A stretch of DNA of 63,028 nt, filler included, from Ministeria vibrans ATCC 50519 (taxonomy: Eukaryota; Protista; Filasterea), in NCBI GenBank assembly GCA_943704425.1. It is 10 parts of 10 records of this genome, joined end to end, with 100 filler letters (N's around TTAATTAATTAA, not from the genome) between each part and the next. Parts side by side here need not be neighbours in the genome. Positions count along the whole stretch, not along the records: positions 10,949 to 19,725 come from CALSCP010002093.1; 9 more parts are not named here. One strand, written 5' to 3'. Below are positions 10,953-19,725 of the stretch, piece by piece (within the stretch, counting starts at the first letter, position 1; every line of letters begins with the position of its first letter). A program made the position numbers and the translations under genes. Under the pieces are notes generated by a model, which saw only the letters and a program-made list of their open reading frames with translations, was not told the origin of the DNA and ran no database searches.

Positions 10953-11059
<107 letters not shown>

Positions 11060-11889: not shown

Positions 11890-14135
11890 ATGCGTCTTTC
11901 GTTAACTCTGTGCTGCATCGTGGCGGCGGCCGTCATGGCCTCCAGCACGGCCCCGGCGTGTCCCGGCAACCAGCAGTGGCAGGAGTGTCCTACTCCGCCT
12001 GCGTGCGCCCCCACCTGCCAGAACGCTAAGCTAGGGTACACCTTGCTGCCATTAATATGACATTGTATTACTATTTCTTTCAGAACTTGAGGACTCAATC
12101 TTTGGATCGCCTGGTTTTTTTTTTTTCTTTCTTATTTTTTTTTTTTGAACTTCTCGAAACAACTCACTACTTATCCCCTTCGCGAATGCGTCGTCTCTTC
12201 ATCGTCCCGCATGCCCGTGCACCTTCTTCATCCTTTCCATGCGGTTTCCTCGTCTGGCAATGTGCTCACGACTCACTTTGACGGGAAAGTTTTTTTTTTT
12301 CTCTCTCTCTCGTCCCTCTTCCGCTTCAAACTCCCTTTTCGCCATACCCAGTGTCCCCGGGTGTACCCCACCCACATGGGTGCACCGCGTGTGTGAATAC
12401 TCCCATGAGTTCGTATTAGCCGTGTTTGCGTGCACGTGAAGGAAGTGCGAGAATTATAATTACCCTATGCATTCTCACCGTTCGTTTCCCTTCCGATTGT
12501 GCTTTGCAGAATGGCCTGTCCTATGTACTGTCTCGCTGGGTGTGCGTGCCCCACTGGCCTGATGCTGGATGAGACCACCAACGGCATGTGTGTGGAGACG
12601 TGCCCGCCTGCGCCCGCCGGTCAGTGTACGCTTGCCGACGGCGCAGTCAAGTCGTCCGGCGATGCGTGGAACGACGAGTGCAATTCATGCAGCTGCGCCG
12701 ATGGCAAGTCCAAGTGCGTGCGCGACATGGCCATTAACAACTGCCCTACGGGCAAGGTGTGCAAGTCGATGGTCGGCTCGAGCGAACCGGGCATCTGCGT
12801 TGAGCAGGAGGCTACCTGTACCGTCGGTGCGCTCTCTTACTCTCCAGGCAGCACTTGGACCCAGGGTTGCAACACGTGCACCTGCTCCAACGAGGGCAAG
12901 AGCACTTGCTCGCCGACACCTTGCACCACCCCCACTTGTGCTGATGACGAGACGCTCACTCTGATGAACGCCGGCACCGGTGTTGCTCCGTCGTGCTGCG
13001 ACGTCTACACTTGCCCCAAGACAGTTCAACAGCCCATCCTTGGCGCTGACTGTGGTTCGCGCGGCCCGTGCCCTGCTCCCATCACCTGTGCTGATGACGA
13101 GACGCTCACCTTGACCACTCCCGCCACCGGTGTTGCTCCGTCGTGCTGCGATGTNNNGGTTCGCGCGGCCCGTGCCCTGCTCCCATCACCTGTGCTGATG
13201 ACGAGACGCTCACCTTGACCACTCCCGCCACCGGTGTTGCTCCGTCGTGCTGCGACGTCTACACTTGCCCCAAGACATCCACCGTCTCAAACCCTATCGT
13301 GGGCAACACATGTGGTGCGCTTGCCCCGTGTTCGCCAGCCCTTCCTTGCCCGGCTGGTCAGATTGCATCCGTCAAGACTAAGGCGACAGGTGTGCCTCCG
13401 CTGTGCTGCAACGAGTACGAATGCGTCACTGCAGACAGCTCGCATGTCCAGTGCAGCGCTGTGGCATGTGCCACCACCATGCCTCTTTGTACGGGCTCCG
13501 AATTCCTTGAAAAATTCCCGGCCACCGGAGTGTTTCCGGACTGCTGCGACCGCTACATGTGCGCGGGTGCCACTGTGCGCAACATGTGTGCCAACAACGC
13601 CGAGTACTGCGTCACTGTCGCCGTTGACTTTGCTCAGGCGCTCGCCGTCTCCGCTGAGTCCGCCTGTGCCTCTCTCACCCTGTCCGCGTCCGTCTCGCGC
13701 CTCTGCACCTATGCTAATGATGGTCGTCGTCTTCTCGTTGCCATTGGCTCAGCCATCTCTAATGGTGAAGTCGCGGATGCGGCTGAGCGTCTCCGCCAGC
13801 TCATCGTCTCGCACACGCTTCAGGAACAGACAGCCATCTTTGCGTCGGCAACGAATGCTCAAGTGGTCGCAACGTCACAGCGTAACAACAACAACAACAA
13901 GAGTGACGGCAACACTGGCGTTATTGTGGGCGCAGTCGTCGCAGGCGCTGTCGCCGTCATTCTCATCGCCCTCGCCATCGTCAAAGTGGTCCGCACCAAG
14001 CGAACCTCGAGCCACTCCTTCGAGCGCCTCTCCGACGAGGTCAGCCCAGGTTCTCCTTCCTCCTTCTACGTCGCGATGCAGGACACGGACGACTCGGTTG
14101 TCAACGCAGAGACCGCCATCATTCAACTCGAGTAA
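11890..14135 (+). CDS. Cys-rich type I membrane protein (TIL domain, VWC/pacifastin-like modules, Cys-rich repeats, TM)
   Basis: Signal peptide; CPGNQQWQECP..CAPTC TIL motif spliced across ~12035-12509; WNDECNSCSC and WTQGCNTCTC; TM VIVGAVVAGAVAVILIALAIV. The frame break at NNN 13155-13157 is an assembly gap. Confidence 0.8.
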
Positions 14136-14413: not shown

Positions 14414-16159
14414 ATGCCCTCTCTTCAGGGTGTTCTTGGCTTCGTTCTGATCTTGTCTGTCTCGGCGCAGGCGGCGTGCCCGTGCAGCGAGGAAGCGCTG
14501 TGTCGTACAATCGACTCTGGACCGCGCAAAGAGGTGTTTGCCTTCCATGTCACGTCCAAGGGCGATGTGTACCAGCAGTTTGACATGAGCCAGGTGACGA
14601 CCATCTCGATTGCGGGCGATCTGAGCAACGCAACGCTCCTTTCAAATGTTGTTTGCTTTGCACACCGTTACGGCGCACGCGCAACCCTCCTTGTGGATTA
14701 CCCTAAGAACCAGCTCAGCAATGCCACTGCGCGTTCAGAGTGGGTCCAGGCGCAGCTGGCTAAGGTTGCCTCAGTGTTTGCAGACGGTATCAACACGAAC
14801 TGGACTCACGCACTCTCATCTCACCATGCCACCCTCAATTCCCTCATCACTTGCCATCACCATCCCAGACTCAAGTGAACGCACACACTCATCACTTCCC
14901 ATTACCATCTCACACCCAAGTGAACGCACACACTCATCACTTCCCATTACCATCTCACACTCAAGTGAACGCACACACTCATCACTTCCCATTACCATCT
15001 CACACCCAAGTGAACGCACACACTCATCACTTCCCATTACCATCTCATACCCAAGTGAACGCACACACTCATCACTTCCCATTACCATCTCATACCCAAG
15101 TGAACGCACACACTCATCACTTCCCATTACCATCTCACACCCAAGTGAACGCACACACTCATCACTTCCCATTACCATCTCACACTCAAGTGAACGCACA
15201 CACTCATCACTTCCCATTACCATCTCACACCCAAGTGAACGCACACACTCATCACTTCCCATTACCATCTCACACCCAAGTGAACGCACACACTCATCAC
15301 TTCCCATTACCATCTCATACCCAAGTGAACGCACACACTCATCACTTCCCATTACCATCTCACACTCAAGTGAACGCACACACTCATCACTTCCCATTAC
15401 CATCTCACACTCAAGTGAACGCACACTCTCATCACTCACCATCACTCTTTTTGTTTTCTTAGGCATCAACTTTGATATTGAGGGAAGCTCAAGCGATCGG
15501 AATTCACTGACTCAGCTTACCACAGAACTTGTCAATGCCTTCAAATCGGCCAATCCCCATTCGCAAATCTCCATGGACACCTCAATATATCCTTCCGCTG
15601 ACAACCCAGGTTACGACTTTGTCGCACTCGCTAAAGTTCTGGATTTCTTGTGTACGAAACACACAAGAAATCGCTTAACTCATCCTCGTTTGTCAGTTCC
15701 TATGGCATACGATATGTGTTGGGGCGCCAAAGTTGCAAAGGCCAACTCCCCATTGCCCGGAGTGAAAAGCGGTCTTGAAATGTATCAAAATCTCGGAATC
15801 TCAATGGACAAAGTCAGAAAGGCAACTCCCACTCCCCTCGGCTTTAAAGTATCTTTTGGTTTGTGTGTTGGAATATTAGATTGTGATCGGGCTTCCGTGG
15901 TACGGATATGAGTTTCCGTGCGACTCGCGAGCTCTTAATGCGACGTGTGACGTGTCAGTGCCCTTTGGCGGTGGTTCCTGGTCACTTGCTTTCTCCGATG
16001 TCCGTTTGACTCTTTTTTTATCACTTTGTTTCTCTCTCTATCCATTTTTTTCTTTCTCTCTATCACTTTCTTCTTCCCTCCTTTCTTTCAAACTCTCTTA
16101 AACTCTCTCTCTCTCCCTCTCTCTTTCTCTCCTTCAAACTCTCTCTCTCTCTCTCTCTG

Positions 16160-16239
<80 letters not shown>

Positions 16240-16521
16240 CAAACTGTTGATATTTAGGTGTTAGCGCGAATGGACGACACTACGATTGTTCAAATGGACT
16301 CGGTGTCGCAAAGTCCTTATTTTGATGTAATTTCGCCCGTGACGCACAATCGTTCGCGCATTTTTTACGACGACGAGACCTCTCTTCCGCTGCGCTATGC
16401 GCTGGCCAATCAGATGCATTTGCGTGGTGTAGGCTTTTGGACAGCAGATTTCTTGAGCTATGCCAATGGAAAGAGAGTCCAGTCCATGTGGAATGCTGTC
16501 AAAACTTTCAATTCTCATTAA
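14414..16521 (+). CDS. CTBS: Di-N-acetylchitobiase-like GH18 glycosidase
   Basis: CPCSEEALC, spliced DGINFDIE catalytic motif, DFLFPMAYD, ANSPL, GLPWYGYEFPC, LRGVGFWTAD. Confidence 0.88.
14872..15440. repeat. 45-bp minisatellite, ~12.5 copies, in chitobiase intron 1
   Basis: Unit CAAGTGAACGCACACACTCATCACTTCCCATTACCATCTCAYACY, head-to-tail with no spacers. Confidence 0.95.
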
Positions 16522-17137
16522 ATCAAAGTTCACTATATTTTCTGAAGTGGCTCCATGACTANNNNNNNNNNNNNNNNNNNNNNNNNNNNNNNNNNNNNNN
16601 NNNNNNNNNNNNNNNNNNNNNNNNNNNNNNNNNNNNNNNNNNNNNNNNNNNNNNNNNNNNNNNNNNNNNNNNNNNNNNNNNNNNNNNNNNNNNNNNNNNN
16701 NNNNNNNNNNNNNNNNNNNNNNNNNNNNNNNNNNNNNNNNNNNNNNNNNNNNNNNNNNNNNNNNNNNNNNNNNNNNNNNNNNNNNNNNNNNNNNNNNNNN
16801 NNNNNNNNNNNNNNNNNNNNNNNNNNNNNNNNNNNNNNNNNNNNNNNNNNNNNNNNNNNNNNNNNNNNNNNNNNNNNNNNNNNNNNNNNNNNNNNNNNNN
16901 NNNNNNNNNNNNNNNNNNNNNNNNNNNNNNNNNNNNNNNNNNNNNNNNNNNNNNNNNNNNNNNNNNNNNNNNNNNNNNNNNNNNNNNNNNNNNNNNNNNN
17001 NNNNNNNNNNNNNNNNNNNNNNNNNNNNNNNNNNNNNNNNNNNNNNNNNNNNNNNNNNNNNNNNNNNNNNNNNNNNNNNNNNNNNNNNNNNNNNNNNNNN
17101 NNNNNNNNNNNNNNNNCAAAAAAACACACACAAAAAG

Positions 17138-17211
17138 TGCGCCCGGCAGGATTTGAACCTGCAACCTCCGGGTTAAGAGTCCGGTGCTCTGACCAGTTGA
17201 GCCACGGGCGC
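17138..17211 (-). tRNA. tRNA-Lys(CTT)
   Basis: GCGCCCGTGGCTCAACTGGTCAGAGCACCGGACTCTTAACCCGGAGGTTGCAGGTTCAAATCCTGCCGGGCGCA; full cloverleaf, A31:C39 mismatch, T-run downstream. Confidence 0.9.
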
Positions 17212-17243
17212 ATGCAATGCAATACAAACAAACACAACAAATG

Positions 17244-17316
17244 TGATGGCTGTGAGAATCGAACTCACCAAACTCGCATCCTAAGTGCGATCCCTTCACC
17301 AGTTGGGCAAGCCACC
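17244..17316 (-). tRNA. tRNA with TAG anticodon (Leu), short variable loop
   Basis: GGTGGCTTGCCCAACTGGTGAAGGGATCGCACTTAGGATGCGAGTTTGGTGAGTTCGATTCTCACAGCCATCA; perfect anticodon and T stems, 5-nt variable region. Confidence 0.82.
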
Positions 17317-17344
17317 ATACATAATAATACACAAGAAAGATGGG

Positions 17345-17415
17345 GGGGACTTGGCGGGGACGATCCGCCTCCTCGACGTTCCGAACGACGAATGCTACCG
17401 TTACAACAAAGTCCC
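17345..17415 (-). tRNA. Atypical tRNA-Pro(CGG)
   Basis: GGGACTTTGTTGTAACGGTAGCATTCGTCGTTCGGAACGTCGAGGAGGCGGATCGTCCCCGCCAAGTCCCC; 7-bp acceptor, 5-bp T stem, T loop ATCGTCC. Confidence 0.75.
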
Positions 17416-17454
17416 AAAGAACACAAAAACAACAAAAGAAACAAGCGGGAGGGG

Positions 17455-17525
17455 GGGGACTGGGTGGGGACGATCCACCTCCTCGACGTTCCTAACGTCG
17501 AATGCTACCGTTACAATACAGTCCC
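17455..17525 (-). tRNA. Atypical tRNA-Pro(AGG)
   Basis: GGGACTGTATTGTAACGGTAGCATTCGACGTTAGGAACGTCGAGGAGGTGGATCGTCCCCACCCAGTCCCC; perfect acceptor, anticodon and T stems. Confidence 0.78.
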
Positions 17526-17539
17526 AAAGAGAGGAGAAG

Positions 17540-17611
17540 AGCCCAAGACGAGTATTGATCTCGTTTCTTCGCCTTGAGGGGGCGATATCCGTTCCATCGG
17601 ACCGCAAGGGC
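17540..17611 (-). tRNA. Atypical tRNA-Glu(CTC)
   Basis: GCCCTTGCGGTCCGATGGAACGGATATCGCCCCCTCAAGGCGAAGAAACGAGATCAATACTCGTCTTGGGCT; D, anticodon and T stems pair; two U.U in the acceptor stem; C8, G14, C33, A54. Confidence 0.65.
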
Positions 17612-18170
17612 AATAGTAGGTGATGTGGGTGGGTGGGTTGAGTGAAATTGCAAGAGAGTGAGAGAGAGAAAAGAAGAAACTTTTCTGACTGGGGAAATGG
17701 TTAAATTCGCGCAATTTATACTCGAGGGTCGATGATGAAAGAATTGCTCATCGCTGATTTCTCATTCCCCTCTGCGCCACACACTATCTCTCCGTAGCAA
17801 ACAACTGTACAAGCTCATTTCAAGAATCATACACGCAACGAACCCTATTGGAAAGTAAGCTTGGTCGACCAATCTCTCCCAAAAACAAACACAGTGCGCC
17901 AAAAAAAAATCGTTCGACCATACAAAGATAGCACGAAAACAAGTGAGTGTTGTTATATGTTTAATTCCACCCCTGTTTCCACACCACAGCGCAAAAAAGA
18001 ACCCCGGTTTACATATAGGATCGCGTGCGGGTCGAGAGCAACGCGAATGTGCTCTTCCGCAAATTGAAAGTCTCCTTGTACTGTGGTTCTCATTGTTCAC
18101 AAAGTCGTCAGCAATAATATAATAATATAATAATTGGGTTGTATTGATAAATTAATCGTCCTGAGACACC

Positions 18171-19500
<1,330 letters not shown>

Positions 19501-19640
19501 CTACCCAACAATCAATCGCAGTCAGACTCTCTATCACTTTGTTTTCTCTCTCTCTATCACTTTGTTTCTCTCTGTCTGTCTCTCTGTCTCTCTGTCTCTC
19601 TGTCTCTCTGTCTCTCTGTCTCTCTGTCTCTCTGTCTCTC

Positions 19641-19725
<85 letters not shown>

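What the first reader, a model, noticed from the sequence alone, without database searches (positions are those of the whole stretch)
17138..17611. Cluster of five co-oriented, rule-breaking tRNAs: a possible second or specialised tRNA set
Seen: five minus-strand cloverleaves in 474 bp, in order Glu(CTC)-Pro(AGG)-Pro(CGG)-Leu(TAG)-Lys(CTT), with spacers of 14-39 nt. Runs of 4 or more T occur only after Pro(AGG) and Lys. The cluster runs into a 555-nt non-linker gap that may hide more. Four of the five break near-universal features: A54 and degraded B-box (Glu, both Pro), no A58, A37 and T10 (Pro), C8/G14/C33 (Glu), no long variable arm (Leu). Known: relaxed T loops and short-arm Leu typify animal mitochondrial tRNAs, whereas AGG/CGG/CTC/CTT anticodons and Pro G1-C72/C73 are cytosolic-type. 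Inference: a polycistronic nuclear tRNA set transcribed without normal internal promoters. It could be dedicated to mitochondrial import, virus-derived, or reflect lineage-wide tRNA remodelling.
Basis: partly seen in the sequence, partly recalled or inferred. Interest (0 to 1): 0.85.

Follow-up and report, generated by a model that had tools for sequence, protein, structure and literature searches.

The report
Nuclear cluster of five odd tRNAs
A marine microbial eukaryote carries five tRNA genes in a row, and several have unusual shapes (a leucine tRNA without its long extra arm, proline tRNAs with an altered elbow loop); they look like working, co-transcribed genes rather than junk, but I could not show that they are the cell's only such tRNAs.

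Summary
Five co-oriented minus-strand tRNA-like genes lie in 17138-17611. All five pass Rfam's tRNA threshold of 29 bits: Lys-CTT 73.1, Leu-TAG 53.2, Pro-AGG 43.2, Pro-CGG 36.6 and Glu-like-CTC 30.3. The last appears only when searched alone or with ARAGORN relaxed by 5%.

The listed oddities are real:
- Leu-TAG has a 5-nt variable region (type I).
- Both Pro genes have T loop AUCGUCC (A54/U58), A37 and U10·U25.
- The Glu-like gene has C8, C33, A54 and two U·U acceptor mismatches.

Evidence for function:
- The Pro paralogues differ at 7 sites, and 4 of these form two compensated pairs (P≈0.001). Their trailers have diverged far more.
- Other runs hold a contig with a third Pro copy whose anticodon first base reads T (TGG).
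- The anticodons fit the window's preferred codons.
- Runs of four or more T occur only after Pro-AGG and Lys.
- A contig from a cDNA-bearing run spans Pro-CGG 3' end, Leu and Lys with spacers intact, while neighbouring silent DNA is uncovered.

Setting: the surrounding DNA is nuclear, with spliced, polyadenylated genes.

Most likely this is an ordinary Pol III cluster of cytosolic tRNAs with lineage-specific structure, made as two polycistronic precursors. Virus, organelle and SINE origins find no support. Whether canonical isoacceptors coexist is untested.

The parts
17540..17611 (-). Glu-like tRNA, anticodon CTC. It is borderline: C8, C33, A54, A60, and U·U mismatches at 5-68 and 6-67 in the acceptor stem.
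   Evidence: RF00005 30.3 bits when searched alone. ARAGORN calls it at -ps95, with 0 calls in 493 kb of shuffles. The MFE fold is a cloverleaf with a 4-bp acceptor stem.
17455..17525 (-). tRNA-Pro(AGG): G1-C72, C73, T loop AUCGUCC (A54/U58), A37, U10·U25, 4-nt variable region.
   Evidence: ARAGORN; RF00005 43.2 bits; cloverleaf drawing.
17416..17454 (-). Trailer of Pro-AGG with T4 and T5 runs. Inferred to be the Pol III stop of a first unit (Glu-like + Pro-AGG).
   Evidence: Sequence read and T-run count.
17345..17415 (-). tRNA-Pro(CGG), a paralogue of Pro-AGG. The two differ at 7 sites, including two compensated stem pairs.
   Evidence: ARAGORN; RF00005 36.6 bits; compensation test.
17244..17316 (-). 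tRNA with Leu anticodon TAG and a type I body: 5-nt variable region, 3-bp D stem with A13·A22, G37, A73, canonical T loop.
   Evidence: ARAGORN; RF00005 53.2 bits with no insertion in the variable region; drawing.
17138..17211 (-). tRNA-Lys(CTT). Structurally canonical, with A73. Its acceptor and T arms are identical to those of phage/bacterial-type tRNAs.
   Evidence: RF00005 73.1 bits; exact 25-mer matches and alignment.
17117..17137 (-). Trailer of Lys with T5 and T7 runs. Inferred to be the Pol III stop of a second unit (Pro-CGG + Leu + Lys).
   Evidence: The cDNA-run contig covers 17141-17356.
17319..17530 (.). Tandem duplication with a 110-nt period (102 nt aligned, 84% identity) that produced the two Pro genes together with their trailers.
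   Evidence: the repeat finder family D3; flank alignment.
16562..17116 (.). Assembly gap (N) immediately downstream of the cluster. Its content is unknown.
   Evidence: A contig in run X16 runs 108 nt into the gap, but its letters were not shown.

Best explanation
This is a nuclear cluster of RNA polymerase III tRNA genes in a poorly sampled marine eukaryote. It encodes cytosolic decoders for CCU/CCC (Pro-AGG, presumably read as IGG), CCG (Pro-CGG), CUA/CUG (Leu-UAG), AAG (Lys-CUU) and perhaps GAG (Glu-like-CUC).

I infer two polycistronic precursors: Glu-like + Pro-AGG, and Pro-CGG + Leu + Lys. Each would end at the only downstream runs of four or more T, and RNase P, RNase Z and the CCA-adding enzyme would then cut them into single tRNAs.

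The unusual features are the type I tRNA-Leu body and the Pro family with A54/U58, A37 and U10·U25. I read them as lineage-specific structural drift that the cell's own synthetases and modification enzymes tolerate, not as signs of a separate organellar or viral set. The Glu-like gene is the most degraded and may be a pseudogene.

Shown here: the five cloverleaves, their order and spacing, the compensated changes, the T-run pattern, the nuclear setting, and an RNA-run contig with intact spacers. Inferred: Pol III transcription, processing, charging with Pro and Leu, and cytosolic use.
For: - All five pass the RF00005 gathering score. ARAGORN made no calls in 493 kb of shuffled sequence.
- The elbow contacts G18, G19, U55 and C56 are kept in all five.
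- Pro-AGG and Pro-CGG differ at 7 of 71 sites. Four of these form two compensated pairs, G7-C66 to U7-A66 and U-A to C-G in the T stem. P≈0.0014 for at least two compensated pairs among 7 random changes. The genes are 90% alike, whereas their co-duplicated 28-nt trailers are 61% alike.
- Runs X12 and X16 hold a contig Pro-CGG, Leu, 28-nt spacer, Pro-like copy. That copy differs at 11 sites, and one of them changes the first anticodon base C to T, giving TGG. This makes the usual eukaryotic trio AGG/CGG/TGG on one unusual body.
- In 885 codons of the window, CCT+CCC = 30, CCG = 18, CCA = 5, AAG 17 against AAA 8, and GAG 23 against GAA 9. The anticodons therefore fit nuclear usage.
- CTG codons sit at Leu positions conserved in 25 to 26 of about 31 GH18 homologues.
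- Run X14 holds the spliced, poly(A)-tailed form of the neighbouring gene, so it contains cDNA. It has no coverage of 17357-18114 or of the intron, yet it has a 217-nt contig over 17141-17356 with both spacers intact.
- Runs of four or more T occur only after Pro-AGG and Lys.
- Depth in X12 and X16 over the Pro and Leu genes (about 3-5) is close to that of the single-copy flank (about 2.4-2.7), so this is not a high-copy repeat.
- The same ATCGTCC T loop occurs in unrelated tRNAs (Asn, Gln) that score 50-54 bits in metagenome contigs, so this loop variant is compatible with otherwise good tRNAs.
Against: - No mature, CCA-tailed or charged RNA was seen. Contigs cannot show ends or strand, and labelling X14 as RNA rests on one spliced transcript.
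- The whole-genome tRNA set is unknown, so canonical Pro, Leu-UAG and Glu-CUC genes may exist and make these copies redundant.
- Pro-CGG has a U·U mismatch in the anticodon stem.
- The Glu-like gene has four serious defects.
- CTA was not used once among 60 Leu codons, so selection on Leu-UAG may be weak.
- Runs X12 and X16 match at 99-100% in non-coding flanks, so they are the same or a nearly identical organism and give no deep comparative test.
- Lys has A73 and a bacterial-type acceptor/T arm, which is unexpected for a eukaryotic cytosolic tRNA-Lys (my recollection of eukaryotic sequences, not tested here).
Confidence: 0.55

Rival explanations
1. The odd members are redundant, decaying duplicates (tRNA pseudogenes). 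The Glu-like, Pro and Leu genes would be relics of local duplication that may still be transcribed but do not take part in translation. Canonical genes elsewhere would do the work.
For: Scores are low (30-43 bits). There are mismatches in stems: U10·U25, U28·U42 in Pro-CGG, and two U·U in the Glu-like gene. C33 and A37 are present. The Pro unit arose by tandem duplication. CTA is unused in the sample.
Against: Two compensated pairs between the Pro paralogues, and gene bodies conserved much better than the co-duplicated trailers. The unusual features are shared exactly by both Pro copies, and the same body carries a third copy with a TGG anticodon, which fits a maintained family and not random decay. 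Leu has no stem defect apart from one G·U pair and has a canonical T loop.
Confidence: 0.2
2. A type I tRNA with anticodon UAG is charged with an amino acid other than leucine. That would recode or ambiguously decode CUA (and perhaps CUG), in the way the yeast mitochondrial tRNA-Thr(UAG) or the CUG-clade tRNAs do.
For: The long variable arm, normally part of eukaryotic cytosolic tRNA-Leu, is missing. CTA is absent from 60 Leu codons in the window, as expected for a codon in flux.
Against: CTG aligns with strongly conserved Leu in GH18 homologues. A73, G37 and a 3-bp D stem with an unpaired 13-22 are what a Leu or class II derived tRNA would keep (read from the sequence, plus general knowledge of identity elements). 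There is no G3:U70 (Ala) and no enlarged anticodon loop. Type I tRNA-Leu can be leucylated by some LeuRS enzymes (PMC6614811).
Confidence: 0.07
3. This is a specialised second set of nuclear tRNAs made for import into an organelle that has lost its own tRNA genes.
For: The features look relaxed or 'organellar'. Lys has a bacterial-type acceptor/T arm and A73.
Against: Anticodons AGG, CGG, CTT and CTC read one or two codons each and fit GC-rich nuclear usage. An organelle set would be expected to use U34 (plus general knowledge). Pro has the eukaryotic G1-C72/C73 end. The genes are 54-64% G+C. No organelle data were available.
Confidence: 0.06
4. The tRNA island was captured from a giant virus or phage-like element.
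For: Tight clustering, short spacers and deviant structures resemble viral tRNA islands. In passing I saw type I 'Leu(TAA)' tRNAs and A54 T loops in IMG/VR contigs. The Lys 3' half is identical to tRNAs in 10 viral contigs.
Against: Exact-pattern scans of IMG/VR found nothing for the Pro or Leu genes. Only Lys resembles a viral tRNA, and that framework is shared by Met, Arg and Lys tRNAs of bacterial type. Both flanks are cellular: an intron-bearing GH18 gene, a spliced poly(A) transcript and host-type microsatellites. CCA is not encoded.
Confidence: 0.04

Closest known systems
Polycistronic nuclear tRNA gene clusters of eukaryotes (yeast dimeric tRNA-Arg/tRNA-Asp, plant tRNA-snoRNA and tandem tRNA units, Chlamydomonas tRNA clusters). 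From my own knowledge; see also PMC1635290 on Pol III gene clustering.
   Same: Co-oriented tRNA genes 14-39 nt apart, T runs only at the end of groups, no encoded CCA, and a precursor-like RNA contig that keeps the spacers.
   Different: In this cluster three or four of the five members have non-canonical bodies. Transcription by Pol III and processing are inferred, not shown.
Type I tRNA-Leu: animal mitochondrial tRNA-Leu(CUN/UUR) and Streptomyces coelicolor tRNA-Leu(CAA) (PMC6614811).
   Same: Leu anticodon on a tRNA with a short (5-nt) variable region. A73 and the U8-A14 pair are present.
   Different: This one is encoded in a eukaryotic nucleus, is 54% G+C and has canonical D/T-loop contacts. 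PMC6614811 states that in eukaryotes type I tRNA-Leu is confined to mitochondria. Leucylation was not tested here.
Eukaryotic initiator tRNA-Met T loop (A54, A60). From my own knowledge; A54 is discussed in PMC10602860.
   Same: A54 replaces T54 in both Pro genes and in the Glu-like gene. The Glu-like gene also has A60 and C33.
   Different: These carry elongator anticodons. The Pro genes pair A54 with U58 instead of A58, and there is no A1:U72.
tRNAs whose anticodon and body disagree: nematode nev-tRNAs (PMC3333845) and anticodon/isotype mismatches flagged by tRNAscan-SE 2.0 (PMC8450103).
   Same: The structural class and the anticodon do not go together.
   Different: nev-tRNAs are the mirror image, a class II body with Gly or Ile anticodons. 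Here a class I body carries a Leu anticodon.
Viral or phage tRNA islands (for example the 15-tRNA island in L013 from IMG/VR).
   Same: Dense one-strand arrays, deviant loops, and occasional type I 'Leu' tRNAs.
   Different: There are no viral genes nearby, no sequence match beyond the generic Lys framework, and the flanks are host-like.

Membership tests
tRNA (Rfam RF00005) | Score at or above the curated gathering score of 29 bits, over the full-length model. | tested here: met
   73.1, 53.2, 43.2 and 36.6 bits and 30.3 bits. All cover model positions 1-71.
tRNA (Rfam RF00005) | Conserved elbow nucleotides G18, G19, U55 and C56. | tested here: met
   Present in all five alignments.
tRNA (functional gene) | A mature, CCA-ended, aminoacylated RNA exists. 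| not testable with these tools
   Only assembled contigs were available. They show presence of RNA with spacers, not mature ends or charging.
Canonical eukaryotic cytosolic tRNA-Leu (type II) | Long variable arm of 10 nt or more. | tested here: not met
   The variable region is 5 nt (GUUUG) in both the Infernal and ARAGORN alignments.
Animal mitochondrial type I tRNA-Leu | Encoded in mitochondrial DNA, or lying in a NUMT. | tested here: not met
   The setting is nuclear, with spliceosomal introns and a spliced poly(A) mRNA. The neighbouring anticodons AGG and CGG do not belong to an organellar set, and G+C is 54-64%.
tRNA-derived SINE or dispersed pseudogene family | High copy number with a shared tRNA-unrelated tail. 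| tested here: not met
   Depth over the Pro and Leu genes is about 3-5, against about 2.4-2.7 for the unique flank, in X12 and X16. No repeat extends beyond the 110-nt local duplication. A whole-genome count was not possible.
Viral tRNA island | Embedded among viral genes, or matching viral contigs. | tested here: not met
   No IMG/VR matches for Pro or Leu. The flanks carry intron-bearing cellular genes. The 555-nt gap remains unseen.
Pol III type 2 (internal promoter) gene | A box and B box near consensus. | tested here: inconclusive
   A box and B box matches: Lys 7/7 and 9/10, Leu 6/7 and 8/10, Pro 5/7 and 7/10. The Glu-like gene is poor, at no more than 4/7 and about 5/10. The tolerance of this organism's TFIIIC is unknown.
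Polycistronic tRNA transcription unit | A single transcript spans at least two tRNAs. | tested here: inconclusive
   A 217-nt contig from cDNA-bearing run X14 covers the Pro-CGG 3' end, Leu and Lys, while adjacent silent DNA is uncovered. Contigs cannot prove one molecule or its strand.

The most novel reading that the evidence does not exclude
In this under-sampled marine eukaryote the cytosol decodes CUA/CUG with a type I (short-arm) tRNA-Leu. It also decodes all proline codons with a tRNA-Pro family that lacks m1G37 (it has A37) and the T54-A58 pair (it has A54/U58). No canonical counterparts would exist. LeuRS, Trm5, the m1A58/m5U54 enzymes and perhaps TFIIIC would then have co-evolved with a remodelled tRNA set.
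Probability: 0.3. Interest if true: 0.75.

Novelty: new variant of a known kind. Interest (0 to 1): 0.5.

Why it matters
Type I tRNA-Leu is known from animal mitochondria and from one Streptomyces species, and is said to be absent from the eukaryotic cytosol (PMC6614811). G37 in tRNA-Pro and the 54-58 pair of the T loop are among the most constant tRNA features.

If this nucleus-encoded set is in use, three consequences follow:
- It would be a natural test case for how LeuRS identity, reading-frame maintenance at CCN codons and T-loop architecture can change in a cytosolic system.
- tRNAs of this kind score 30-43 bits and are dropped by 'high-confidence' filters, so similar sets may go unnoticed in protist genomes.
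- Genome annotators would wrongly report Pro or Leu-UAG genes as missing.

If canonical copies exist elsewhere, the cluster is merely a locally duplicated, slowly decaying tRNA array of modest interest.

Tried and rejected
- Naming the organism failed.
  - The Cys-rich ORF had no homologue.
  - The GH18 exons are only 40-53% identical to proteins from diplonemids, euglenids and unnamed assemblies. The second search was seeded with a diplonemid protein, so that ranking is biased.
  - The published Diplonema papillatum genome description (long introns, a contig assembly) does not obviously fit, and it reports no odd tRNAs.
  - A sample-code search in the literature gave nothing.
- Closing the gap or finding longer contigs through exact ORF products gave only a 514-nt metagenome scaffold.
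- The metagenome scan for the Pro D-loop and T-arm pattern found only unrelated Asn and Gln tRNAs and one chance hit, and no contig of this organism.
- Two scans of prokaryote genomes found nothing for the Pro pattern and only chance hits without tRNAs for the Leu D arm.
- A D-arm comparison with the roughly 36 tRNAs fetched in passing could not tell whether Leu-TAG descends from a class II Leu, because the reference set is too small and is bacterial or phage.
- Literature searches for A54/U58, and for nuclear tRNA-Leu without a long arm, found no description.
- The Rfam 'Plastid-ycf2 5'UTR' hit (47.6 bits, below its threshold) is the antisense of the Lys tRNA and is an artefact.
- NUMT and organelle origin were rejected on anticodons, G+C and setting.

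Full report
**Observation**

ARAGORN at default settings finds four minus-strand tRNAs in the piece: Lys-CTT, Leu-TAG, Pro-CGG and Pro-AGG. Rfam's tRNA model finds the same four at 73.1, 53.2, 36.6 and 43.2 bits, against a gathering score of 29.

It was recovered in two ways:
- When 17520-17640 is searched alone, it scores 30.3 bits over the full model at 17540-17611.
- ARAGORN calls it once its threshold is lowered by 5%. That setting produced no further call in the 8.8-kb piece and none in 493 kb of shuffled sequence.

So five tRNA-like cloverleaves do stand in 474 bp on one strand. The spacers are 14, 39, 28 and 32 nt. Runs of four or more T occur only after Pro-AGG (T4, T5) and after Lys (T5, T7).

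- Both Pro genes have T loop AUCGUCC (A54, U58), A37, a U10·U25 mismatch and a 4-nt variable region.
- Leu-TAG has a 5-nt variable region, a 3-bp D stem with A13·A22, G37 and A73.
- The Glu-like gene has C8, C33, A54, A60 and two U·U mismatches in the acceptor stem.
- G18, G19, U55 and C56, which form the elbow, are kept in all five.

**Setting**

The piece is nuclear DNA of a eukaryote.
- On the + strand lies a five-exon GH18 (di-N-acetylchitobiase-like) gene with short GT-AG introns.
- Upstream of it is a Cys-rich gene with weak VWC/TIL matches that fall below Pfam's cutoffs.
- Long (GA)n, (CT)n and (TG)n microsatellites are present.
- About 0.5 kb upstream of the cluster, on the same strand, two runs hold a transcript with a 54-nt GT..AG intron removed and a poly(A) tail at 18115.

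The stretch occurs in ten studies, among them 'algae', 'seawater' and 'biofilm' metagenomes, so the organism is marine. I could not name it. Its GH18 is only 40-53% identical to the nearest proteins on record, which come from diplonemid and euglenid transcriptomes and from unnamed assemblies.

**Are the genes maintained?**

The two Pro genes arose by a 110-nt tandem duplication that included the trailer. They differ at 7 of 71 positions.
- One difference is the first anticodon base.
- Four differences form two compensated pairs, 7-66 G-C to U-A and a T-stem pair U-A to C-G. Seven random substitutions give at least two compensated pairs with P≈0.0014.
- The gene bodies are 90% alike. The co-duplicated 28-nt trailers are 61% alike.

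All the unusual features are identical in both copies. Runs X12 and X16 also hold a contig in which Pro-CGG and Leu are followed by a 28-nt spacer and a further Pro-like copy. That copy differs at 11 sites, and the first anticodon base reads T (TGG). One unusual body therefore carries AGG, CGG and TGG, the normal eukaryotic proline trio. This is the pattern of a maintained gene family, not of random decay.

Depth over these genes in X12 and X16 (about 3-5) is close to that of the unique flank (about 2.4-2.7), so they are not a dispersed repeat. X12 and X16 match the non-coding flanks at 99-100%. They are therefore the same or a nearly identical organism and give no deeper comparative test.

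**Use**

I counted 885 codons in the window's own genes:

| Amino acid | Codon counts |
|---|---|
| Pro | CCT+CCC 30, CCG 18, CCA 5 |
| Lys | AAG 17, AAA 8 |
| Glu | GAG 23, GAA 9 |
| Leu | CTA 0 of 60 Leu codons |

Anticodons AGG, CGG, CTT and CTC thus match preferred nuclear codons. A set made only for an organelle would be expected to use U34 anticodons. CTG codons align with Leu positions conserved in 25 to 26 of about 31 GH18 homologues, so there is no sign that CUG is recoded. CUA could not be judged.

**Transcription**

Run X14 contains cDNA, because it holds the spliced, tailed form of the neighbouring gene at depth 277. It has no coverage of the intron or of 17357-18114. Yet it holds a 217-nt contig at depth 7.6 over 17141-17356. 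That contig runs from the 3' end of Pro-CGG through the spacer, Leu and the next spacer into Lys.

Together with the T-run pattern, this fits two Pol III units: Glu-like + Pro-AGG, and Pro-CGG + Leu + Lys. This remains an inference, because a contig shows neither strand, nor ends, nor a single molecule.

The internal promoters are not absent:

| Gene | A box (of 7 specified) | B box (of 10 specified) |
|---|---|---|
| Lys | 7 | 9 |
| Leu | 6 | 8 |
| Pro (both) | 5 | 7, including G53, T55, C56 |
| Glu-like | 4 at most | about 5 |

**Other origins**

- Virus. Exact-pattern scans of IMG/VR found nothing for the Pro or Leu genes. The 3' half of Lys is identical to tRNAs in ten viral contigs. There it belongs to Met, Arg and Lys tRNAs alike, so it is a generic bacterial-type acceptor/T-arm framework.
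- Prokaryote. Reference genomes have neither the Pro pattern nor a tRNA with the Leu D arm.
- The T loop elsewhere. The metagenome scan found the same ATCGTCC T loop in two unrelated, well-scoring tRNAs (Asn, Gln). This loop variant therefore recurs in otherwise good tRNAs.
- Organelle or NUMT. This is excluded by the anticodons, by G+C of 54-64% and by the setting.

**Comparison with known systems**

Tight, co-transcribed nuclear tRNA clusters are known. The bodies are what is unusual.
- According to PMC6614811, type I tRNA-Leu is known from mitochondria and from Streptomyces coelicolor. In eukaryotes it is kept apart from the cytosolic type II tRNA-Leu.
- I found no paper describing a nuclear type I tRNA-Leu or an A54/U58 T loop. 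The library is incomplete, so this is not proof of novelty.
- Nematode nev-tRNAs (PMC3333845) are the mirror case.

**Verdict**

The cluster is most likely (0.55) a working nuclear Pol III array of cytosolic tRNAs with lineage-specific structure. The Glu-like member is doubtful. A redundant, decaying array is the main rival (0.2).

The decisive step is a whole-genome tRNA census and tRNA-seq of this organism, neither of which could be done here. Novelty: a new variant of a known kind. Interest is moderate at 0.5, and higher (0.75) if these prove to be the only Pro and Leu-UAG decoders.

Noticed in passing
window 14414-16521 (+): Five-exon GH18 (di-N-acetylchitobiase-like) gene. Exons lie at about 14414-14794, 15462-15653, 15699-15800, 15880-16002 and 16285-16521. 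It is 40-53% identical to proteins of diplonemids and euglenids. The first intron holds 13 copies of a 45-nt tandem repeat (14843-15436) that stays open in several frames.
   Followed up: partly
window 12499-14135 (+): Cys-rich gene with weak VWC/TIL/pacifastin-like matches (below Pfam's cutoffs), a repeated 104-nt unit around a short run of N (13051-13255) and a C-terminal membrane span. No homologue was found in the 5.8-billion-protein search.
   Followed up: partly
window 18115-18400 and beyond (-): Spliced, polyadenylated transcript seen in two RNA runs. It has a 54-nt GT..AG intron at 18255-18308 and a poly(A) site at 18115, about 0.5 kb upstream of the tRNA cluster on the same strand. 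Its coding part was not identified.
   Followed up: no
runs X12 and X16, laid on window 17243-17422: An alternative arrangement: Pro-CGG, Leu-TAG, a 28-nt spacer, then a Pro-like copy reading T (TGG) at the anticodon first base where the window has Lys. It is either an allele or a paralogous array. Its Leu differs from the window's Leu at 2 positions in the last ~30 nt at its 3' end.
   Followed up: partly
L001 1989-2060 (-) and L002 6819-6892 (+): Unrelated metagenome tRNAs (Asn-GTT next to a tmRNA; Gln-TTG with encoded CCA) carry the same D loop AACGGTA and the same T arm GGNGG-ATCGTCC-CCNCC as the Pro genes. The A54/U58 loop is therefore a recurring natural variant.
   Followed up: partly
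L013 61-3733 (-): A 195-kb IMG/VR contig with 15 tRNAs in 3.7 kb. Its His tRNA also has A54 (T loop ATCGGTA). Its Lys-CTT shares the window Lys's T arm and acceptor 3' strand.
   Followed up: no
L008 201-276 (-) and L016 6138-6213 (+): Two viral contigs carry an identical 76-nt tRNA with the Leu anticodon TAA but a short variable region. Type I 'Leu' tRNAs therefore also occur in phage-like DNA.
   Followed up: no
window 17137-17211 (+): The Rfam 'Plastid-ycf2 5'UTR' match (47.6 bits, below its 65.7 threshold) is simply the antisense of the Lys tRNA.
   Followed up: yes
window 17709-17716 (-): A TATAAAT motif lies about 100 nt upstream of the first tRNA-like gene. That is too far upstream for a usual -30 element, and its role is unknown.
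   Followed up: no
window 10954-11056, 16103-16236, 18490-18611, 19545-19725: Long (TC)n, (CT)n and (TG)n microsatellites of 50 to 60 copies each surround the genes.
   Followed up: no
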